This document shows, in pieces, positions 555 to 42,180 of a stretch of 43,457 nucleotides of DNA. The notes under the pieces are model-generated. The model ran no database searches and was not told where the DNA came from. It worked only from the letters and a program-made list of their open reading frames with translations. The translations under genes were made by a program, and so were the position numbers. The stretch lies in the NCBI RefSeq assembly GCF_001194135.2, contig NC_069002.1:21249939-21293395 (forward strand). Direction: 5' to 3'. Numbering within the stretch: position 1 is the stretch's first letter; each line of letters opens with the position of its first letter. This DNA comes from Octopus bimaculoides (lineage: Eukaryota).

Positions 555-1375
555 ATTGATTGTTCCATTAGGTGGTAGCAATTCAAAATGAATTACTCCT
601 TTGCAATCCCATCAGATAGAGAGAAGAAACTTTTTCCCATGAAGTTCTTTTCTCGGTTGTGGTTGAGCTTTTTCCCTTTTACCAAGCCACTGTTTACGAC
701 ATTTAACATTTCGATAGAAGATCCATTTTTCTTCACTAGTCACAAGTCTATTCAAAAAGGGTGAAATGAGTTCACCAGAATGGAGAGAAGAGCATATGTC
801 TACTCGGGATTTTCGGTTGCTTTCGGACATTTCATGAGGCACCCATTTTCCAAGTTTAGGAAGTTTTCCAAGTTGTTGAAAATGACCATGAACAGTTGTA
901 TGATTTGAACTAAGCTTTATTGCCAATTCTTCAACTGATAATGCAGGATTTTCTTCAAGTAGTGCCTCAAGGAGCTTATCATCAAACGCAACTGGACATC
1001 CTGTTTGATCTTCATCTTCAAGGCTGAAATCTCCACTTCTGAATTTTGCAAACCATCTTCTGGAAGTTCTTTCATTCAAGTATTCTTTCCCATAAACTGA
1101 GTGTATGTTTCGAGTTGCATTAGCTGCAGAGTTTCCTTTTTTGTACTCATAAAGCATTATGTACCTTAAATGCTCTTTGGATACTTCCATGTTAGAAAGG
1201 GCTTTAATCAAAGAAATTTTAATTCTATTATTCTGTAAAATTATATTTGATTAGGTTAAATGTACACAAATGCATAAAAGTAATTCTTAATTCCATTAGA
1301 CATTCTAAAATACTATTAAATTTTATTCAATTTAAAAAAGGTAAAATCGGACAGAACTTATGGGATGACCTTATA
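555..1375 (-). mobile_element. Truncated mariner (Tc1/mariner, DD34D-type) DNA transposon: 5' TIR plus N-terminal two-thirds of the transposase
   Basis: ORF 1211->612 has a mariner HTH (EHLRYIMLYEYKKG...RWFAKFRSGDFSLED), WVPHEM (WVPHEL motif) and LVTSEEKW (VTGDEKW with catalytic D->E). The frame continues past TGA 614-612 as *WDCKGVIHFELLPPNGTIN to about 555. A TIR-like end reads TA|TAAGGTCATCCCATAAGTTCTGTCCGA on the minus strand from 1375. No 3' half or second TIR is seen. Confidence 0.9.
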
Positions 1376-7968: not shown

Positions 7969-8104
7969 GCACACCTACATACATGTATGAAATGCGTAAT
8001 GTCGGTCAACCATTCCCTCGTGGTCACAAGGTTTAACAGCCCCCTATTGTTTATTGTGCGTTGCATCATTTTGTGCGCTTATGTCTAAGAAAGTACATCA
8101 TGTT

Positions 8105-8156
8105 GCTGTTGTTTTTGTTTTTGTAAGTGGTGGTGGTGGTTCTGCTACTGCCGTTT

Positions 8157-8193
<37 letters not shown>

Positions 8194-8300
8194 CGATGAT
8201 GATGTTGATGATGATGATGATGATGACGACGATGATGATGACGACGATGATGATGACGATGATTATGACGACGATGGCGACGATGATGATAATGATGATA

Positions 8301-8383
<83 letters not shown>

Positions 8384-8420
8384 AATAATATCGATTACGA
8401 TGATGTTGTTGATGCTGTTG
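8105..8420. repeat. Compound (GTT)n/(GAT)n/(GAC)n trinucleotide microsatellite
   Basis: Directly visible; it generates the poly-V/D/M/H ORFs in the track. Confidence 0.95.
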
Positions 8421-8874
8421 GTATGCGTTGAGATTGTCGGCCATGTTTCCTTTGGCTCTTCTATACCGTAGATGATTAAAAGATGAAACTACTTGAAAAA
8501 AGAAAATGTTTTAATGCAGTGTCTCTAAATAGGAAATAAGGTAGTATAATTGTTTGCATTATTTGTTTCCCACTTTCGTGGGGGAAAATTACTTCTAATT
8601 TACGAAAGAAAATTGTTTCTTTTCTACTACTTGTAAACAAGTACATCGGCAGTGCGTGTAGAAACGCCCCCGCAAAGTAGTCGAACGAAAACACTTTTCT
8701 CCAAACAAGAGTAAACCGAAAATAAAAGCAGATACTAATTTCGGTTCTCAGCAGAATTCATTTATTTCACAACAACATTTATTTCGCAGCAACAATAATA
8801 CATCCGCAGGTGTTCTATAGACTTCTTGCTTTCGTTTGAATTAATTACATTGATATTTTGGTGCGAATTTTCAG

Positions 8875-8913: not shown

Positions 8914-9061
8914 GTAAGGTATATCAACGGCTTATCAAACAGCGTGAAAAAATGAATACGTTGTGCACCACGCAAGAATCATCGGGTTTTTTTCATTTTC
9001 CTAGTAAGTATAGTACAATTATAATTGCCAGTTGTTGATTAGGAAACCATATAATATTAGT

Positions 9062-9258
9062 TACAAATTTATGGCACAAGGCCATCAAGCTGAGGGGAGG
9101 GGCTAAATCGACTAGATCGAACCCCACTGCTCGACTGGTACATATTTTATCGAGCCCGAGAGGATTGAAGGCGAAGTCGACAACGCCGGAATTTGAACTC
9201 AGAACCTAAAGAGTTACCGCTAAGCATTCTACATCCTAATGATAGATAACTTGTCGCC
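9062..9258 (-). mobile_element. tRNA-derived SINE, family B (degenerate)
   Basis: The reverse complement contains ATGCTTAGCGG, TTCTGAGTTCAAATTCCGGCGTTGTCGACTTCGCCTTCAATCC, GTACCAGTCGAGCAGTGGGGTTCGAT and the tail GGCCTTGTGCCATAAATTTG, homologous to copies at 10694 and 35995. Confidence 0.75.
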
Positions 9259-9321
9259 ATGTATTCTTCCCGGCGTGCAAAGATTCTGCAGTTATCCCTC
9301 GAGCAGTAATCCCTCGAACTG

Positions 9322-9408
9322 AACATTTCTGACCAATTAACCAGTTCCGTCTTCTTGCTAGAACAACAGTAGCAAGAAGACGGAAATGGTTAATTGGTCA
9401 GAAATGTT
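9322..9408. repeat. Inverted repeat / stem-loop: 39-bp arms (38/39 paired), 9-nt loop
   Basis: Arm 1 (9322-9360) is AACATTTCTGACCAATTAACCAGTTCCGTCTTCTTGCTA, the loop (9361-9369) is GAACAACAG, and arm 2 (9370-9408) is TAGCAAGAAGACGGAAATGGTTAATTGGTCAGAAATGTT. The single mismatch is G9344/A9386. Confidence 0.97.
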
Positions 9409-9873
9409 AAATTTCAAATTTATAAAAAAAGACAGAGAAAATGAGCCACAAAATACATCAGACCATGGACAAGAAAACCCAAATGAAGCTAAAAACAAAT
9501 ACAATAAATGGGGAGAGTCCTTTGTAAGCATGATAAATGATGATGAAGGTTTCAGTATATTTCGAGAATACCTTCTCAATACTGTGATGAAAACTTAGAT
9601 TTCTGGAAAGCAGTTGAATACTTCCGAATCGAACCTGATGACACCCAAATTCGTGCCCGGGTTGGTGCCATTTATAAAAGATTCATCATGTAGGGAGCAC
9701 CACGTTGTATAAATTTGCGCTCAAAAAGTCGTGAAAAACTTGGTGAACAGCTGAAAGGCCCAATTACCCGATTTTTATTCGATGAAATGCAGAAAAAAAC
9801 TTTAGAAGTCATGCAAAGGGACCCTTAACAGAGGTTCTTGAGATCGGAGTATTATCGAAACTTATGTACATAG
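9386..9873 (+). pseudogene. Regulator of G-protein signalling (RGS-box) pseudogene, small RGS-type
   Basis: Frame 1 reads MVNWSEM...EAKNKYNKWGESFVSMINDDEGFSIFREYL. After a frameshift at 9575-9576, frame 2 reads QYCDENLDFWKAVEYFRIEPDDTQIRARVGAIYKRFIM*GAPRCINLRSKSREKLGEQLKGPITRFLFDEMQKKTLEVMQRDP*QRFLRSEYYRNLCT*. This has the RGS hallmarks W-x-ESF, F-x-EYL, ENLDFW, IY-x2-FI...AP-x2-INL, FDE-x-Q and D-x3-RFL-x-S. In-frame stops are TAG 9691-9693 and TAA 9826-9828; the terminal stop is 9871-9873. Confidence 0.9.
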
Positions 9874-10044
9874 ATTCATATGAAGATGGTTGGAGGGGAG
9901 GGGGGCCTTACTACTGCCACCACAACTGCCATTGTCATCACCACTGTTAACACTACCATCATTACTAGCACCACTAGTTACTATCACTACAACTATTGCC
10001 TCCAACACAAACACTAACACTATAAACCAACAAATGAGCCTCTA

Positions 10045-10066
10045 TATTATTATAATTATAATTATA

Positions 10067-10117
<51 letters not shown>

Positions 10118-10209
10118 TTATGTTTGACTTTTGTTTTGCATTTGTACAAGTTGGATCCAAGTCTCACCCAGAGACCTCAAGAGACAACAAGTTATTATTA
10201 TTATTATTA

Positions 10210-10290
<81 letters not shown>
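10045..10290. repeat. Two (ATT)n microsatellite tracts
   Basis: Directly visible at about 10045-10118 and 10190-10290. Confidence 0.95.
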
Positions 10291-10669
10291 CTTCTAAATT
10301 ACTGATCGTTTATCTCAATGCCTGCTGAAGAAAAAAATTATCTTTCTTCGACATATCCTTACTTCAGCTTTTTATATTCATCACAACATGGTTTCTCGAT
10401 GCAGGAGTGCCTGGAACACCAACAAGGAATATCATAATGAACATAACAAAACACTTTGCAACTGATAACACAAAACAAAACAAAAAAACTAAATTCAACA
10501 AAGCATCAATATATAGAAGTAATTGAACGCATTTCTAACAAGTGACAACATTAATGTAGACGATTCCAAAGAAGGTACCGTCAACTCCTGCCACAAATGT
10601 TCACCTTACAACAAGAGTTACAGAAAATATTTATTATTGCACAGTTTCTGAAGAAAAATCATGGACATA

Positions 10670-11278
10670 GGAGCAGGTGTAGCTGTGTGGTAAGGCGACG
10701 AGTTGGCAGAAACGTTAGCACGCCGGGCGAAATGCTTAGCGGTATTTCGTCTGCCGTTACGTTCTGAGTTCAAATTCCACCGAGGTCGACTTTGCCTTTC
10801 ATCCTTTCAGAGTCGATAAAGTAAGTACCAGTTACGCACTGGGTCACTGTAATCGACTTAATTCCTTTGTCTGTCCTTGTTTGTCCCCTCTATGTGGGCA
10901 ATAAAGAAATAAGAAGCTTGCTTTCCAACCACATGGCTCAGGGCTCACTCACTGCGTGGCGCCTTGGGCAACTGTCTTCTACTACACTCTCAGGCCGACC
11001 AAAGCCTTGTGAATGGATTTAGTAGTCGGAAGCTGAAAGGGGCCCTTCATGTATACATTTATGTATATATATTTATGTGTGTGTGTTTTGACAACCGATA
11101 TTGGTGTGTTTATATCCCCGAAACCTAGTGGATCGCTAAAAGAAAGCGTGCGATAGAATAAGTAATAGGCTTACAAAGCGTAAGTCCTGGGATCGATTTC
11201 TTCGATTAAAAAGCGGTGCTCCAGTATGGCCGCAGTCAAATGACTGAAACGTATAAAAGATGGAAATAATAAAAGAGT
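10670..11278 (+). mobile_element. SINE family A copy interrupted by a nested SINE family B
   Basis: The head GGAGCAGGTGTAGCTGTGTGGTAAG (10670-10694) resumes at 10914 as AAGCTTGCTTTCCAACCACATGG and runs to the CAGTC-AAAT-GACTG tail at about 11235-11250. Confidence 0.85.
10694..10913 (+). mobile_element. tRNA-derived SINE family B nested in family A
   Basis: GGCGACGAGTTGGCAGAAACGTTAGCACGCCGGGCGAAATGCTTAGCGG...GAGTTCAAATTCC (B-box-like)...GTCGATAAAGTAAGTACCAG..., bounded by TAAG at 10691-10694 and 10910-10913. Confidence 0.85.
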
Positions 11279-11381
11279 ATATGGTTCTGGAATGTTACTA
11301 AAAGACGTATCACCTTTCCTTAGGAATTTATCCAACACTAGGCAGGAAGGAATGTGACTTATCTCTGCTTCATAAACGTCT

Positions 11382-11441
11382 GAATGGATATCCAGAGAAT
11401 GGATATCCAGAGAATGGATATCCAGAGAATGGATATCCAGA
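11382..11441. repeat. Perfect 15-bp tandem repeat x4 (GAATGGATATCCAGA)
   Basis: Four identical units at 11382, 11397, 11412 and 11427; each contains the 10-bp palindrome TGGATATCCA. Confidence 0.97.
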
Positions 11442-12339
11442 GAGGGAAGTCACACAAAAATATAGAGATGGCACAGCTCAGAGAATGCAATGCGTTGAAT
11501 TTATAAAATTTGATTTTAAACCTTAATTTGTGAAATCAGGAACCAGTTAAATTACTAACTTCAAACTAATCCACCGTTGTTTCACGAATTTTGCGGCATT
11601 GTTCCAATATGAGAAATTATTAATGAGTTATGTAAGACCTCATAGTACAATCTCAGCCCTGTCTTGATTGTCTCTCCTATCTGCAGGATCAGTACAATTA
11701 CAAATCTAATTAGTGAGGCCAATTTAGTAGAGATCACGAAGCATGTATTAGGAATCTTTCATTTTATAGTACACAGTTTCTCTTTGAGGTTTTCTCGATC
11801 CTCATGTCATACTCTAAAAACATGTCACCGTCGTTCGTTTGATTTTGGATTTAGCTTTTGTCTTCTTAAATGTCAGCTACTAGGTCTTTGTTTACTGTAA
11901 TAATATCATTCTTGATAATAGTATTATTATTCGTTTTCCTCCTCGTCCCGCTTCTTTTTGCGCAAGAATAAAGAATAAAAGTAGGAAGACAGGACGAAGA
12001 AACTCATGAAAGAAGGAAATGTGATTGCAAGAAAGAAAAAATAAACGCGTAAAAAAGAGGGAGAAAACAGGAATAATGAAAGAAAGGAAGGAGAAAAGAA
12101 TGAGTGATTGAAATAAAGAAATGTAAAATATGGAAAAGAAATCATGGGATTGAAAATGAAGAAAGGAAAAAAAATCTTCTAAAGAAGAAAGATAAAGAAA
12201 GAATGGAAAACACTCAGGAAAACCATCTCCCGTCCCACCACCACCACCAAGAATCATTTAAATCATTCAGCATGATGTCATGAATAATTGCTCAGGTTAA
12301 TTAAGTTTGATGTTTTAATGGGTGTAGTCCTGTTTGAAT

Positions 12340-13027
12340 ACAACAGCAAACATTTTAACAACAACAACAACAACAACAACAATAGTGAATAGAGCAACAA
12401 CACCAGCATCAAGAATAATATGAAAATTAAAACTGATATCATCATCATCATCATCATCATCATCAATGCTAATAATATCGTTATCATTACTATGGTGCTA
12501 AACAGCCCGGCAAACATAACATCAATATTAATTGCAATATACACCATCAACACAGTTCCAATAACAATAATAATAATAATAATAACAACAATAATAATAA
12601 GAATAATAAAATTATTATTTTTATGATTATTATTATTATTATTTCATTTTATATTTATAGTCATCATTCTCAGTGTCTTCACTAACATCGTCATCAACAG
12701 CATCAGTACTATCCTAATCATGAAAACCAATATCTACGTCATCATCACCATCATCATTACCACCACCACTACCACCACAAGCACCACCATCATCATCATC
12801 ATCATCACCATTGCCATCATCATTGCCATCATCATCAGCCCAATTTTCATTATTTTCAGCCTCATTGTCTCCACCATCTTCATGAAAAGTCAGCACCTCC
12901 ACCACCATTAACACCGAATTCTCTTTCTCGGGTCTTCTCCAACGTCTCACGATAATTACCCATATGTTAATTAGAAAATCGCCATCCACTCTATTCTCAA
13001 CAATAGCAATATTATTATGATATTAGT

Positions 13028-13061
<34 letters not shown>

Positions 13062-13500
13062 GTCCTAGTCACTGATAACAAAACCGTATCAATAATACCA
13101 ACACCATCCTCTAAGCATTTCTTAATGCCGTCATTATACTTATCCTCACTGATATTGTCACCGCCAACCTCATCGACTTCATCATCATCTTCAGCAGCAT
13201 CATCATAATTATCATCCTCGTCCTCGTCATCGTCATCATCACTCTCAACTGCTCCATTCTCCGCCCACCACATCTTCTCATCACCTTTCACTCAGTCGCG
13301 TTTGCATCTCCGCCATCACCATTATCTTCGTCATCGTCGTCGTTTTCATCATCTCGTCAGTTGCCACCATAATCAGCATACATCGGTTCGTCCTCAGTTT
13401 CACTTATCATCTCCCCCTCTTCTTACTCGACCACCAGCTACTCATCAACATCATCATCACTACTCTCATCATCAGAAGCAACAGCAGCACCATTAATATT
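12340..13500. repeat. Low-complexity (CAT/CAC/AAT/CAA)n trinucleotide-rich region
   Basis: Directly visible degenerate trinucleotide tracts; source of spurious poly-I/H/D/S ORFs. Confidence 0.9.
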
Positions 13501-13832
13501 ATCATTACAACCATTTATTTCTGGACGCCGGACAACGGAAGTGCGTTTAAATATATCAACATGAAAACTTTGCGTTGTTGTTGGTGTTGTTGTTGTTTAC
13601 CTCCAGGTAATCTAACAACATAAAAACTCAGCTGCTTCAACAGCATTGATATTATTTACAGTATAGCAATACCGTAAATAATGAAAAATGCAACGTAATT
13701 CTTCACAATGCCATTGGTGTCAATATGCAGCAACATTGATCCGCCTGTTCAGGATCTCCCAAATGACCGCACGACCTGCTAAAGAAGACAGCCAAATCTC
13801 CTTAACTTCAGCCCTAATAGTTTAGGCAGAAA

Positions 13833-13890
<58 letters not shown>

Positions 13891-13894
<4 letters not shown>

Positions 13895-14714
13895 GGGCTA
13901 AACTAAATGCGAAAGAAATAGACAGAGAAAAATCCCAGCAAAGGCTCAGAAGTTCAGGGCTCAAAGCAGAGACTGAAGAATTTTTAATTGCTGCACAAGA
14001 CCAGAGCCTCCCCACCAGAAATTACCAAAAACATATAATGAAAAGACATATAACAAGTAACTGTAGAATATGTGGAGATCGACAAGAAACAATAAATCAT
14101 ATTATCTCTGGCTGCCCAGTCCTGGCTAAGAAGGAATATATTCACAGACACGACAGAGCTGGGACCTATATACACTGGAAGCTATGCCAATACTATGGAA
14201 TAACAACAGAAAAAAGATGGTATAAACACACGCCAGAAAAGGTCACAGAAAACGAGAAAGCAACCATACTCTGGAATATGCCAATACACACAGATAGAGA
14301 AATTAAGGGAAATAGACCAGATATAGTTGTCAAAGATCATGAAGGAAAAAAATGCTTTCTAATTGATGTATCAATACCAGCAGATGACAACGTTTCTCTA
14401 AAAGAAATGGAAAAACTTTCAAAATACAAAGACCTGGAAATAGAGATAACTCGAATGTGGAATCTAAAAACAGAAACAATTCCTATCATAATAAAAAAAA
14501 TATTCAGACAAATACATAACAAAAATACCAGAACTTACAAATATATATAACATACAGAAAATTGCACTACTGGGTACTGCACACATTCTACGCAAAACAC
14601 TTTCAATACAGTAAATATAAGAGCACCACAGCAAACCACAGCACATACCCAAGGCGCACAGAGCTGCGCTCGGTAGTGAAGTGAAAGTACGTTATAAAAA
14701 TAAAACTACTGAAC
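13891..14714 (+). mobile_element. 5'-truncated non-LTR retrotransposon with CCHC zinc knuckle and restriction-like endonuclease (R4/Dong-like clade)
   Basis: The frame from 13891 reads YWAKLNAKEIDREKSQQRLRSSGLKAETEEFLIAAQDQSLPTRNYQKHIMKRHITSN, then CRICGDRQETINHIISGC (CCHC), RHD, NRPDIVV...LIDVSIP...EKLSKYKDL (PD..D/ExK nuclease). After a deletion/frameshift near 14490 it ends KYSDKYITKIPELTNIYNIQKIALLGTAHILRKTLSIQ* (14612-14614). A 3' UTR runs to 14714, with (AAT)n on both sides. Confidence 0.9.
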
Positions 14715-14843
14715 AATAATAATAATAATAGGAGAGCACGTAGAATAATACAGTTTTAAATGTGCACAAACAGGTTCTCAACCACAATATACCTAGGACT
14801 ACATTGTCCAATGTCATATTGCATCTGTGAAGGATGTTATTTG

Positions 14844-14890
<47 letters not shown>

Positions 14891-15269
14891 TGTGCTAGAG
14901 AGAAAGAAAGAAAGAAATGGAGAGAGCTGACTGTTATTTCTAGCAGCCTCTACAACCACCGACTTCGTTGGTTGAAAAATAACGGCAACAGCAACAAATG
15001 TCATGGTCACCACTACATAAATTTTATAGAGGGCGCTACTTGGTTGTAGATATAAAAGAACTTTTTTGCAGTACTTAATGGCGTCTCTATTTATCTCGAT
15101 TCTCAAGTCCCATGAGATTCACTGTGTCTCTGATCTTTCATAATCTAGGATCGATAAGATATTACCAATAATAGAGCGAGAGACGCGTCAATTGAATAGA
15201 TGTTTCTGTTGACGAAATTTGGCATTACATCAACCAGAAGTACCATCATCATCGTCGTCGCCGTCGTCC

Positions 15270-15301
<32 letters not shown>

Positions 15302-15504
15302 CGTCGGGTTAATGAAGGAAATGACTTGGCGTGTAAATCAGCATAACTACAACCGCATCAAGAACAACCAACAAATTAGTTACAAACCATAACAATATTA
15401 AAATCAACATCTAAAATACAGAAGACACAATAAAACTAATGAAGACACACACACACATATATATATATCATAAAAATGATAACAAAAGGTAAATAGAGGA
15501 TTTT

Positions 15505-15581
<77 letters not shown>

Positions 15582-17789
15582 AATAGCAAAACCTTCTGCA
15601 TCACAGAGAGGCGAAGCCCACAGAGAGAAAGATAAGATTATGAAATTTACAAGATAAATTAGCAAAAAACACCACGACTACGATAAACACTTCGGACAAC
15701 AGTGAATATGTCAAAAGCAAGAAGCAGGATAAACAGGAAAATCAAGAGTGAAAGCGGCAATAATAGAGTTAGTATCGGGAGAGATTGAACAGCGAGTTTC
15801 ACTTGAATCTAATAAAAATAAGAACAACAATAATTTTCGATGCAACGTAAGAACCAAACAAAACAACAACCAAAGCAAAATCAAGAAACGAAACAACTGT
15901 AATTCAATAAAAGGATTATGGAAGCCCAGCAGCTCCACAATTATTGTAATATTAACATAAAGAACCACAAAGCAGTCATAAATATAAATATGTATTTTTC
16001 TAAATATAACATAATATATATAATTGGTTTTGTCTGTGTTGCTGATGTTGTTGGCCAGGGTTGGATTTGCAGAGCAGACCTTTGAATAAAGGTGTTCTAC
16101 CCTTAGCAACTCGGTCTTCTCTCAGGGAAACGAAGATCATTTTATCCAATAGGTTCCGGCTTTTTATCATGTTGCCACACCTCTTTCAACCACGTGTTAC
16201 CTTCCCCCAATAATCTGAGACGGCAGCGTAGTAAAAACAAACTTCCATAAATTGACTTAAATTCAATTTTTACCTAAATTAATTTATTCAATATTTTAGC
16301 CACCCACCACCAAGGCCAATGCTAGTGTGTCCATAACGTAGCCAGACCCTGCCAAGGTTAACACATGTTACACAAACTCAAACACGCGCTTATACATTCA
16401 TTCACCCATCCACTCACCGCCTGTCGAACTTTTCCTTGTTTTCCCTCCCATATGACCTCTGCCTATTGAACTCTAATCTTAAATCTTATCGCCATAAGCC
16501 AACAATTAACATCAGAGCTGTAAGCGACATATTTCAAATTTAGTTTCTATATTCCCCTAAGCTCCATTTTGCGGAATTATTATCTCCAACGCCGATCACC
16601 GCAGAAACCAATTCATCAAAACAAAATTTAACCACTTGTTCGTTTGTTTCTTCATAGCATGATAACATCAGATATTTGAATTTTAAGTAGAACTTTAGCT
16701 ATAAATAAAAAAAGAATGGTATCAGCTGACTTCCTACCGGCTTAATCTATACATACACTGACATACACATTTATACAGCTGCATGAACACAGCTGCATAC
16801 ATACACACAACCGAATAACGTACTAAATAATACAAAACACATCTGGAAAATCCCAAATCCTCGTAAACGAAGAATTCAAACCAGAAATTATCTACCACCC
16901 ACCATCCCTGATTTGAAAAGGTACAGAATCCATGAAAACGTTGAACTCAATAAAATACCTCAATTTTCCTGACGCTTCATAACAGGGATTGAACCTGGTG
17001 TCTCTCCGTTGCCTGTTGAGTTTGTCTATTTCCAGAATAAATTATTGATTGTTGTTGTAAGTGTCCCTTGTACTGATATCACTTCATCTCAATGCCGGTA
17101 CTTCCAATTAGACCTTACGCACAGGTACNNNNNNNNNNNNNNNNNNNNNNNNNNNNNNNNNNNNNNNNNNNNNNNNNNNNNNNNNNNNNNNNNNNNNNNN
17201 NNNNNNNNNNNNNNNNNNNNNNNNNNNNNNNNNNNNNNNNNNNNNNNNNNNNNNNNNNNNNNNNNNNNNNNNNNNNNNNNNNNNNNNNNNNNNNNNNNNN
17301 NNNNNNNNNNNNNNNNNNNNNNNNNNNNNNNNNNNNNNNNNNNNNNNNNNNNNNNNNNNNNNNNNNNNNNNNNNNNNNNNNNNNNNNNNNNNNNNNNNNN
17401 NNNNNNNNNNNNNNNNNNNNNNNNNNNNNNNNNNNNNNNNNNNNNNNNNNNNNNNNNNNNNNNNNNNNNNNNNNNNNNNNNNNNNNNNNNNNNNNNNNNN
17501 NNNNNNNNNNNNNNNNNNNNNNNNNNNNNNNNNNNNNNNNNNNNNNNNNNNNNNNNNNNNNNNNNNNNNNNNNNNNNNNNNNNNNNNNNNNNNNNNNNNN
17601 NNNNNNNNNNNNNNNNNNNNNNNNNNNNNNNNNNNNNNNNNNNNNNNNNNNNNNNNNNNNNNNNNNNNNNNNNNNNNNNNNNNNNNNNNNNNNNNNNNNN
17701 NNNNNNNNNNNNNNNNNNNNNNACATATATATGTATGTGAGTGTGCATGTGTGTGATTTTCGTCATATCATACATAATCACCACTGTTA

Positions 17790-26011: not shown

Positions 26012-26467
26012 CAGGATGTTATTAAAACATTTATATCTTCATATCTTCTACATATGTTTCGATGGATTCATCGAAAGTACGTCAAACAGGAAGAATTTTG
26101 GTCAGCTATGCATCAATCTCATCAGGAAAGATATAAATAGTCATTTTCTTATCAAATATAGGAAGCCCTATAAAATGAGACGTATTTATACGTATATGCA
26201 CACACACGTACACACAGGGATATATGCGGATGTGCATGTGTGCGTGTGTGCGTGTGTGTGTGTGAGCGTATGCATATAAATATATCACATGTTCTAGGGC
26301 TTCCTATATCTGTAAAAATGTCTATTTGATGAGTGTTGTTGTTTATATCTTTCCTGATGAAATTGATGCATAGCGGATCATAATTCTTCCTGCCTGAGGT
26401 ATTTTGAATACATCCATCGAAACATATGTAGAAGATATGAAGCTATAAATGTTTTAATAACAGCCTG
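26012..26467. mobile_element. Foldback/MITE-like element with long (about 160-170 bp) imperfect terminal inverted repeats
   Basis: 26012-26170 (CAGGATGTTATTAAAACATTTATATCTTCATATCTTCTACATATGTTTCGATGGAT...TATAGGAAGCCCTA) is the reverse complement of 26295-26467 (TAGGGCTTCCTATA...ATCCATCGAAACATATGTAGAAGATATGAAGCTATAAATGTTTTAATAACAGCCTG). Termini are CAGG...CCTG with TA on the right flank (Tc1/mariner-like). The spacer is (CA)/(TG) microsatellite. Confidence 0.8.
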
Positions 26468-41570: not shown

Positions 41571-41743
41571 ATGTGTGTGTGTGTGTGTGTATATGTATGT
41601 ATATATGTATATATTATATATATATACACAATTACATGTTTAGAGATACATATAAAATGTACATGCATATGTAGGTGTGTGTATATATATATATATATAT
41701 CGAGAAAACCAACATTTTTTTAAATATCTGAGCGAAAGAGCTA

Positions 41744-41946
41744 CAGTTACAGTACCGAATAGTAATCTTTATATGGCAACATAACGTGGCAGTCCTATAA
41801 AAGACGATGTTACTGTTATTTTAGCCCCAGAAAAAGTCTTTTCCAGTTGGTTATCGAAATATAAACTAAAACAACACTAACACCGTCCTTTATAGGACTA
41901 CTACGTTATGTTTGCATATAAACATTACTATCCGGTACTGTTACTG
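41744..41946. mobile_element. MITE with 63-bp terminal inverted repeats (Tc1/mariner-type, TA target)
   Basis: The left TIR 41744-41806 (CAGTTACAGTACCGAATAGTAATCTTTATATGGCAACATAACGTGGCAGTCCTATAAAAGACG) and right TIR 41884-41946 are near reverse complements. TA flanks the left end and CA the right. Confidence 0.85.
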
Positions 41947-42180
41947 CATTTCCCTCACTCAGAGTTTTGAAACATGCTTTTCTCGATACCGAGATCAGCG
42001 ACTGCGTGTCGCTTAAAGAATATATAGTATTTTCGAGTGGAGATAATTTTCGTCACTAGCTGGTGGTTATCTCACACTGAGGATAGATAACCTAGGCCTG
42101 TAAGTATCACGTAAGGCTAGAAGAAGTGGGAGCGATGACCTTCATTGCAAATGCTGTATACAGACACAAACTGTGTGTCG

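What the first reader, a model, noticed from the sequence alone, without database searches (positions are those of the whole stretch)
9322..9408. Hairpin that pairs a complete putative 3' splice site with the start of the RGS exon, with the only mismatch on the A of the ATG
Seen in the sequence: 39-bp arms with 38 pairs and a 9-nt loop. The 5' arm contains a branch-point-like CTGAC (9329-9333) and a pyrimidine tract (TTCCGTCTTCTTGC), followed by TAG (AG 9360-9361) at the stem/loop junction. Splicing there gives AAC AAC AGT AGC AAG AAG ACG GAA ATG, in frame with ATG 9386. The 3' arm encodes SKKTEMVNWSEM, and the single mismatch (G9344/A9386) is exactly the A of that ATG. Inference: folding would mask the branch point, acceptor and start codon together. 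Possible readings are (a) a structure- or ADAR-controlled splicing/translation switch (A-to-I editing is extensive in coleoid cephalopods), (b) a pre-miRNA/hpRNA-sized (87 nt) hairpin born by inverted duplication that could target an intact parental RGS mRNA in trans, or (c) the foldback lesion that inactivated this RGS copy.
Basis: partly seen in the sequence, partly recalled or inferred. Interest (0 to 1): 0.8.

Follow-up and report, generated by a model that had tools for sequence, protein, structure and literature searches.

The report
Fold-back scar on RGS retrocopy
The near-perfect 87-nt hairpin is real, but it is most likely a neutral scar left when the DNA copy of a spliced octopus RGS messenger RNA folded back on itself as it was pasted into the genome, and not a splicing or translation switch.

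Summary
Window 9322-9408 folds into a 39-bp stem with one mismatch and a 9-nt loop (-60.6 kcal/mol, z = -16).

The RGS sequence at 9359-10045 is an intronless processed pseudogene. It matches, end to end, the four exons of a 163-aa RGS4-like gene that spans 16-19 kb in Octopus sinensis and O. vulgaris, and exons 2-4 of the O. bimaculoides gene. All three introns are removed exactly. The copy carries a 4-nt deletion and two premature stops.

The right arm plus the loop is the parental 5'UTR and start of the coding sequence. The left arm is simply its reverse complement. It sits exactly where homology to the parent ends, and it is absent upstream of exon 1 in both species where that can be seen.

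The supposed branch point, pyrimidine tract and AG are mirror images of coding and UTR sequence. The single mismatch is a change in the left arm; the right arm keeps the parental ATG.

The best explanation is that the 3' end of the cDNA snapped back on a 2-nt TA microhomology and copied about 39-44 nt of itself before the 5' junction formed. This junction type is documented experimentally for non-LTR retroelements. No poly(A) tail or target-site duplication is present. Function is probably none, and interest is low.

The parts
9317..9358 (-). Left arm. It is an inverted (reverse-complement) copy of the first ~39-44 nt that follow the loop in the retrocopy (parental 5'UTR plus codons 1-8). Identity is certain from 9322 to 9358. 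Positions 9317-9321 match only 3 of 5, so the outer boundary is ambiguous. It carries the one arm difference, G9344 (T expected).
   Evidence: (window 9322-9359 = reverse complement of O. sinensis exon 1, L001 9986-10023, 97%).
9359..9369 (+). Turn of the hairpin. TA 9359-9360 is the inferred 2-nt microhomology that primed the fold-back. The 9-nt loop GAACAACAG (9361-9369) follows. Direct homology to parental exon 1 starts here, at T9359 = L001 9974.
9370..9413 (+). Right arm. This is parental sequence: 5'UTR AGCAAGAAGACGGAA plus ATG 9386 and the codons for MVNWSEML. It is identical to exon 1 of O. sinensis and O. vulgaris except T9370 (G in those species). The left arm shares that T/A state.
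   Evidence: The O. sinensis and O. vulgaris proteins P0004 and P0003 start MVNWSEMLNFKFIKKDR.
9359..9416 (+). Exon-1-derived segment of the RGS retrocopy.
   Evidence: 98.3% to L001 9974-10031, which is followed there by the donor gtaaga.
9417..9545 (+). Exon-2-derived segment.
   Evidence: L001 23202-23330; L002 9888-10016.
9546..9708 (+). Exon-3-derived segment. It carries a 4-nt deletion after 9571 (frameshift) and TAG at 9691-9693 (AAG in the parents).
9709..10045 (+). Exon-4-derived segment. It holds the rest of the RGS domain with TAA at 9826-9828 (TAT in the parents), the parental stop TAG at 9871-9873, and 172 nt of 3'UTR. Homology to the parents ends at T10045, 19 nt after a TATAAA at 10021-10026.
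9288..9317 (+). A 15-nt tandem duplication (GCAGTTATCCCTCGA / GCAGTAATCCCTCGA) that abuts the outer end of the left arm. It may be a templated insertion made when the 5' junction was joined (inference only).
10045..10121 (.). A (TAT/ATT)n microsatellite that directly follows the 3' end of the retrocopy, where a poly(A) tail would be expected.

Best explanation
Window 9359-10045 is a processed pseudogene (retrocopy) of an octopus RGS4-like gene. It was made by reverse transcription of a fully spliced mRNA.

The hairpin is a fold-back (snap-back) 5' junction. When first-strand cDNA synthesis stopped at the position equivalent to T9359, the free cDNA 3' end (...CTTGCTACTGTTGTTCTA-3') looped back. 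Its terminal TA paired with the internal TA 9 nt away. A polymerase then copied about 39-44 nt of the cDNA itself before the end was joined to the upstream chromosome. That polymerase could have been the retroelement reverse transcriptase or a repair polymerase.

On the plus strand this gives [reverse complement of the arm] - loop - [arm], followed by the rest of the retrocopy, which is exactly what is seen. The hairpin is therefore a mutational scar of integration. It has decayed at about the neutral rate, and it most likely has no function.

Shown: retrocopy status, which arm is parental, the apex coinciding with the 5' end of homology, and absence of the left arm from the parent genes of two species. 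Inferred: the timing (during integration), the TA priming, and the enzyme.
For: (1) Precise intron loss. Four contiguous window segments match four exons spread over 19.3 kb in O. sinensis, with canonical ag/gt borders in the parent. Exons 2-4 match the O. bimaculoides gene at 93-95%.

(2) The copy has a 4-nt deletion and two premature stops.

(3) Direct homology to exon 1 starts at 9359, inside the turn of the hairpin. Everything to the left for 39-44 nt is the reverse complement of the sequence to the right, and contains nothing that is not also in the direct copy.

(4) O. sinensis and O. vulgaris have an A-rich tract, not the left arm, upstream of TAGAACAACAG.

(5) The parental cDNA end alone has no hairpin (-1.9 kcal/mol, z = -0.4), so the structure is created wholly by the duplication.

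(6) Both arms share the T9370/A9360 state, which differs from O. sinensis and O. vulgaris (G). One arm was therefore copied from the other, or both from the same molecule.

(7) Age is consistent. Retrocopy-specific substitutions are 15 in about 610 nt (2.5%). That predicts about 1.9 mismatches between 39-nt arms as old as the insertion. One is observed, or 3 in 44.

(8) There is precedent. Snap-back 5' junctions, in which the cDNA 3' end primes synthesis complementary to the cDNA before 5' junction formation, are a recorded class for R2-protein-mediated insertion (PMC11371274). L1 insertions show inverted duplications with 2-bp TA/AT microhomology and a small hairpin (bioRxiv 10.1101/2024.12.14.628481). 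Reverse transcriptases self-prime hairpin cDNA on 2-nt complementarity (PMC9984361).
Against: There is no poly(A) tail and no target-site duplication of 7 nt or more, so the insertion is not a textbook LINE target-primed event and the integration route is unclear.

Exon 1 of the parent gene in the closest genome (O. bimaculoides) could not be retrieved. It is not within 10 kb upstream of exon 2, in a locus that contains gaps. Absence of the left arm from the parent is therefore shown only for two other species.

The timing cannot be separated by sequence alone from a later DNA-level fold-back. The 2-nt microhomology depends on T9370, which is G in the two parents that could be seen. No read-level or expression data were available.
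Confidence: 0.75

Rival explanations
1. A DNA-level fold-back after insertion. A double-strand break or stalled fork inside an already integrated, longer retrocopy was resected. The 3' end folded back on microhomology and was extended by a cellular polymerase (Pol delta or Pol theta). It was then rejoined with loss of the remaining 5' part.
For: Short (5-34 bp) templated inverted duplications arise by exactly this route at DSBs in yeast (PMC11724301), and at L1-induced breaks. The product is identical in sequence to a snap-back. One mismatch in 39 is also compatible with a somewhat younger event. The adjacent 15-nt tandem duplication looks like a repair-polymerase footprint.
Against: This route needs an extra, independent break plus deletion of the upstream 5'UTR. 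The apex coinciding with the end of the cDNA comes for free if the event happened at integration. There is no trace of RGS 5'UTR sequence upstream of the left arm.
Confidence: 0.12
2. Twin priming (the L1-type 5' inversion). A second primer from the opposite target strand annealed inside the mRNA and made an inverted cDNA, which was then joined to the first.
For: Twin priming is the commonest source of small inversions at LINE-mediated insertions (abstract of bioRxiv 10.1101/2021.12.20.472354, listed).
Against: In twin priming, as I recall the model (Ostertag and Kazazian 2001; not re-read here), the inverted piece comes from RNA lying 5' of the direct piece. Here the inverted piece lies entirely inside the direct piece, with its inner end 9 nt from the direct 5' end. 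The poly(A) tail and target-site duplication that accompany twin priming are also absent.
Confidence: 0.03
3. The inverted repeat already existed in the 5'UTR of the parental RGS mRNA in this lineage and was simply retro-copied.
For: The parental exon 1 of O. bimaculoides, the closest genome, could not be inspected.
Against: The left arm is absent in O. sinensis and O. vulgaris, whose exon 1 and upstream regions are nearly identical to each other. This rival would also require the mRNA 5' end to coincide by chance with the outer end of the left arm.
Confidence: 0.04
4. Assembly artefact: a fold-back chimera created by the assembler or by library preparation.
For: The assembly is gap-rich (12 N-runs in 43 kb), and palindromes are known trouble spots.
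Against: The arms differ at one position. The left arm ends after 39-44 nt in unique flanking sequence. The hairpin is more than 3 kb from any gap.
Confidence: 0.03
5. A functional hairpin, whatever its origin. It is transcribed and acts as an hpRNA or miRNA precursor whose left-arm products are antisense to the 5' end and start codon of the parental RGS mRNA, or as an ADAR- or structure-dependent splice or translation switch.
For: A 38/39-bp duplex is long enough for Dicer. The left arm is 97% complementary to parental exon 1. Pseudogene-derived hairpin siRNAs are known in flies and mouse oocytes (my own knowledge, not checked here).
Against: No known RNA family is matched. The best score is 53.6 bits against a gathering score of 90, with equal scores on both strands. 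The host ORF is broken, so there is nothing to switch. The splice signals are mirror images of coding sequence and are absent from the real gene. Arm divergence fits neutral decay. The arm sequences appear in no searchable paper.
Confidence: 0.03

Closest known systems
Processed pseudogene / retrocopy of a protein-coding gene
   Same: The mRNA-derived copy has all three introns removed exactly. It sits at a locus unrelated to the parent, lacks parental upstream sequence, and has accumulated a frameshift and stops.
   Different: It has no poly(A) tail and no target-site duplication. Its 3' end abuts an (ATT)n microsatellite, and its 5' end carries an inverted self-copy.
Snap-back 5' junctions of non-LTR retroelement insertions (R2-protein PRINT insertions, PMC11371274) and small-hairpin inverted duplications at L1 insertions (bioRxiv 10.1101/2024.12.14.628481)
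   Same: Antisense insert sequence lies directly upstream of the 5' end of the insert. There is a short loop and a 2-nt TA microhomology at the turn.
   Different: Those cases are experimental or somatic events in human cells with known enzymes. In the L1 examples the duplicated DNA is flanking genomic sequence. Here the event is an old germline one in an octopus, on a cellular mRNA copy, and the enzyme is unknown.
Microhomology-mediated fold-back inverted duplications at DNA double-strand breaks (yeast, PMC11724301)
   Same: Arm length is of the same order (5-34 bp there, 39-44 nt here). Both show microhomology priming and joining of the extended end by end-joining.
   Different: Those events start from a chromosomal break, not from a cDNA end.
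L1 twin-priming 5' inversion
   Same: There is an inverted segment at the 5' end of a retroposed sequence.
   Different: The inverted segment here duplicates sequence already present in the direct part, instead of representing the RNA upstream of it. There is no target-site duplication or poly(A).
Hairpin-RNA (hpRNA) and young miRNA loci born by inverted duplication
   Same: A near-perfect inverted duplication of part of a target gene.
   Different: There is no evidence of transcription, processing or conservation. The stem is 39 bp, against hundreds of bp in typical hpRNAs.

Membership tests
Processed pseudogene (retrocopy) | Collinear with the spliced mRNA of a multi-exon parent; introns removed exactly at the exon borders | tested here: met
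   The four exons of the O. sinensis gene (L001 9974-10031, 23202-23330, 26549-26715, 29155-29472) are contiguous in window 9359-10045. The same holds for exons 2-4 of O. bimaculoides.
Processed pseudogene (retrocopy) | 3' poly(A) tract | tested here: not met
   Homology ends at 10045 and is followed by (TAT/ATT)n.
Processed pseudogene (retrocopy) | Flanking target-site duplication | tested here: not met
   No shared word of 7 nt or more between 9230-9330 and 10040-10420.
Processed pseudogene (retrocopy) | Disabled reading frame | tested here: met
   A 4-nt deletion after 9571, TAG at 9691-9693 and TAA at 9826-9828.
Snap-back (fold-back) 5' junction | Antisense copy of the insert lies directly upstream of the insert's 5' end and contains only sequence that is also present in the direct copy | tested here: met
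Snap-back (fold-back) 5' junction | Short loop with microhomology at the turn | tested here: met
   The loop is 9 nt. TA 9359-9360 both matches the parent directly and pairs with TA 9370-9371.
Snap-back (fold-back) 5' junction | Inverted arm absent from the source gene | tested here: inconclusive
   Absent in O. sinensis and O. vulgaris. Exon 1 of the closest parent (O. bimaculoides) could not be retrieved.
L1 twin-priming inversion | Inverted segment represents RNA lying 5' of the direct segment | tested here: not met
   The inverted segment maps inside the direct segment.
miRNA precursor (Rfam families) | Score at or above the family gathering threshold | tested here: not met
   The best hit is mir-2300 at 53.6 bits against 90, with the same score on both strands.
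miRNA / hpRNA precursor | Small RNAs mapping to the arms with Dicer-type ends | not testable with these tools
   No read data were available.
Regulated 3' splice site | Branch point, pyrimidine tract and AG present at the homologous position of the functional gene | tested here: not met
   The parents have an A-rich run there. The signals in the window are the reverse complement of 5'UTR and coding sequence.
RGS domain protein (PF00615) | Full-length match to the RGS profile above the curated cut-off | tested here: met
   The score is 98.3 bits against 23.9, on a conceptual translation with the frameshift and stops bridged.

The most novel reading that the evidence does not exclude
The fold-back created, in one step, a transcribed mini-hpRNA. 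Its left arm would yield small RNAs antisense to the 5'UTR and start codon of the parental RGS4-like mRNA, giving trans-regulation of a G-protein-signalling gene by its own retrocopy in a cephalopod.
Probability: 0.03. Interest if true: 0.55.

Novelty: new member of a known kind. Interest (0 to 1): 0.15.

Why it matters
The main value is as a corrective. A striking hairpin that seems to combine a splice site with a start codon turns out to be the mirror image of ordinary mRNA sequence.

It also has modest positive value as a clean, naturally fixed germline example, in a mollusc, of the snap-back 5' junction so far documented mainly in engineered or somatic human-cell insertions. It marks to the nucleotide where cDNA synthesis stopped.

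A genome-wide count of such scars at retrocopy, LINE and SINE 5' ends could show how octopus retroelements complete integration. The side observation that the O. bimaculoides RGS gene models lack the conserved first coding exon is useful for annotation.

Tried and rejected
1. Splice-switch reading. I compared the window with the real exon 1 in two species. The putative acceptor signals are absent there, so this reading was rejected.

2. Known RNA family. An Rfam scan at permissive E-value gave only sub-threshold, strand-symmetric miRNA-precursor hits.

3. Target-site duplication and poly(A). An exact-word search of the flanks and a tandem-repeat scan found neither.

4. Longer 3' extent of the retrocopy. 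The parental 3'UTR beyond the break point has no match downstream in the window. The only further match is an interspersed repeat.

5. O. bimaculoides exon 1. It is not present in the 10 kb upstream of exon 2 (L002). Only an alternative exon encoding MNPWQLGKYEE lies at about L002 6806. The older model P0001 is not on record for a locus look-up.

6. Independent sightings of the locus. The 70-aa ORF from ATG 9386 is not on record in any assembly. The 25-nt apex sequence has no exact match in JGI metagenome contigs. The arm sequences appear in no searchable paper.

7. Other copies in the window. Self-BLAST found no second RGS copy or extra arm copy.

8. Orthologous empty site. The window contains only transposon remnants and no host gene that could anchor a look-up, so this could not be attempted.

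Full report
**Observation.** The hairpin is real and far beyond chance.
- Window 9322-9408 folds into a 39-bp stem with 38 pairs and a 9-nt loop. The energy is -60.6 kcal/mol against -13.8 +/- 2.9 for shuffles (z = -16.2).
- With two more mismatches the arms extend to 9317-9360 and 9370-9413.
- It is the only high-identity, complex-sequence, short-loop inverted repeat in the window.
- It lies more than 3 kb from any assembly gap.

**What the RGS sequence is.**
- The frame downstream of ATG 9386, bridged over one frameshift and two stops, is a full-length RGS domain (PF00615, E = 4.8e-28).
- Its only close relatives in the protein collection form one cluster of octopus RGS4-like proteins.
- The O. 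sinensis (XP_036364033.1) and O. vulgaris proteins begin MVNWSEMLNFKFIKKDR. That is exactly the peptide encoded by the right arm and what follows it.
- The O. sinensis gene spans 19.3 kb. BLAST of the window against that locus splits window 9359-10045 into four abutting pieces that match four separate exons:
  - 9359-9416 = exon 1
  - 9417-9545 = exon 2
  - 9546-9708 = exon 3
  - 9709-10045 = exon 4 plus 172 nt of 3'UTR
- The exon borders in the parent have ordinary ag/gt sites.
- The O. bimaculoides gene (L002) matches exons 2-4 at 93-95%, better than O. sinensis at 89-94%.
- The window copy is therefore a processed pseudogene, from O. bimaculoides or a close relative. Its lesions are a 4-nt deletion after 9571, AAG to TAG at 9691-9693 and TAT to TAA at 9826-9828.

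**What the hairpin is.**
- Direct homology to exon 1 begins at T9359 (= L001 9974). It runs through the loop and the right arm (98%).
- The left arm (9322-9358, possibly from 9317) matches the same exon only in reverse complement (L001 10023-9986, 97%).
- Upstream of TAGAACAACAG, both O. sinensis and O. vulgaris have an A-rich run (...gaaaaagaaaaa), not the left arm.
- The right arm is therefore parental and the left arm is a derived inverted self-copy. The apex of the hairpin coincides with the 5' end of the retrocopy.
- The parental sequence by itself has no hairpin potential.
The pyrimidine tract is the reverse complement of the purine-rich 5'UTR.
- The one mismatch is a change in the left arm (G9344). 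The right arm keeps the parental GGAAATGG. That it faces the A of the ATG is a 1-in-39 coincidence.
- Both arms share T9370/A9360 where O. sinensis and O. vulgaris have G. This fits one arm having been copied from the other.

**Mechanism (inferred).**
- The minus-strand cDNA ended ...CTTGCTACTGTTGTTCTA-3'.
- Its terminal TA can pair with the TA 9 nt upstream.
- Extension from there copies ...GCAAGAAGACGG... onto the 3' end of the cDNA.
- On the plus strand this is exactly the observed CTTCTTGC-TA-GAACAACAG-TA-GCAAGAAG.
- About 39-44 nt were copied before the end was joined to the chromosome.
- This snap-back geometry is a recorded class of 5' junction in R2-protein-mediated insertions. [quoted passage not shown]
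- Small-hairpin inverted duplications with 2-bp TA/AT microhomology occur at L1 insertions (bioRxiv 10.1101/2024.12.14.628481).
- Reverse transcriptases self-prime hairpin cDNAs on 2-nt complementarity (PMC9984361).
- Cellular polymerases make 5-34-bp fold-back duplications at breaks (PMC11724301).
- An equivalent route is a fully hairpin-capped double-stranded cDNA opened off-centre. It would give the same sequence and cannot be told apart here.

**Age.**
- In a three-way comparison over about 610 nt, there are 15 retrocopy-specific substitutions (2.5%), 13 specific to the O. bimaculoides parent, and 20 on the O. sinensis branch.
- Two arms as old as the insertion should differ at about 1.9 of 39 positions. 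One is observed (or 3 of 44).
- The stem is therefore decaying roughly neutrally. Neither selection nor a very recent origin needs to be invoked.

**What does not fit.**
- There is no poly(A) tail. Homology ends at T10045, 19 nt after a TATAAA, and is followed by (TAT/ATT)n.
- There is no target-site duplication of 7 nt or more.
- The insertion is therefore atypical of textbook L1-type target-primed insertion. Possible reasons are endonuclease-independent capture, target deletion, or later loss of the 3' end, and I could not decide among them.
- A 15-nt tandem duplication (9288-9317) abuts the left arm. It may be a templated insertion from end-joining, but that is only a suggestion.
- The left flank is an interspersed SINE-like repeat (9053-9228) with copies in the O. 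sinensis and O. bimaculoides loci.

**Rivals.**
- A later DNA-level fold-back gives the same product but needs an extra break and a deletion (0.12).
- Twin priming is disfavoured because the inverted piece lies wholly within the direct piece (0.03).
- A hairpin already present in the parental mRNA is unlikely, given two species without it. It remains untested in the closest genome, whose exon 1 I could not retrieve (0.04).
- An assembly artefact is unlikely, given the mismatch, the unique flank and the distance from gaps (0.03).
- A functional hairpin has no support. Rfam hits are sub-threshold and strand-symmetric, the ORF is dead, and the splice signals are mirror images. However, expression could not be tested (0.03).

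**Verdict.**
- Interpretation (c) is right in kind. Interpretations (a) and (b) are not supported.
- The feature is a new example of a known kind of integration scar, and interest is low (0.15).

Noticed in passing
L002 ~6806 and 9888-16061; proteins P0001 and P0002: The O. bimaculoides gene models for this RGS gene look incomplete. XP_014784321.1 starts with an alternative exon (MNPWQLGKYEE) about 3 kb upstream of exon 2. XP_052829148.1 starts inside exon 2. The first coding exon conserved in O. sinensis, O. vulgaris and the retrocopy (MVNWSEMLNFK) is not within 10 kb upstream, and the locus contains gaps.
   Followed up: partly
window 9053-9228 (-) and 10731-10843 (+); also L001 (four full-length matches plus one 25-nt match) and L002: An interspersed SINE-like repeat flanks the retrocopy on both sides. 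Copies are 71-80% identical across loci. A further possible remnant of its head, separated by a ~40-nt insertion, lies at 9270-9292, close to the 5' junction.
   Followed up: partly
window 612-1211 (-): A mariner/Mos1-type transposase remnant (HTH_48 E = 3.7e-21; partial DDE domain).
   Followed up: partly
window 14038-14550 (+): A 170-aa ORF with a weak zf-RVT match (E = 1.8e-4, below the cut-off). It is probably the C-terminal end of a LINE reverse-transcriptase ORF.
   Followed up: no
window 10045-10121 and 10192-10289: Two (ATT)n-type microsatellites (26 and 33 units) lie 70 nt apart, directly 3' of the retrocopy. Their relation to the missing poly(A) tail is unexplained.
   Followed up: no
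window 11382-11443: A perfect 15-nt tandem repeat, GAATGGATATCCAGA x 4.1.
   Followed up: no
window 41718-41972 and 26153-26312: Longer but degraded short-loop inverted repeats (107-nt arms at 81%; 64-nt arms at 80%). They may be old MITE-like or fold-back elements.
   Followed up: no
L001 7972-8182, 16996-17196, 32448-32786; L003 29674-29771: The O. sinensis RGS locus holds three unrelated 200-340-bp near-perfect palindromes with 11-23-nt loops. One is bounded by TTAA...TTAA, and one is shared with O. vulgaris. Short-loop palindromes therefore seem common in octopus genomes. They could be MITEs or fold-back duplications.
   Followed up: partly
window 8054-8471: A long GAT/CAT-type trinucleotide low-complexity tract, which gives poly-Asp, poly-His and poly-Met ORFs in different frames.
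   Followed up: no
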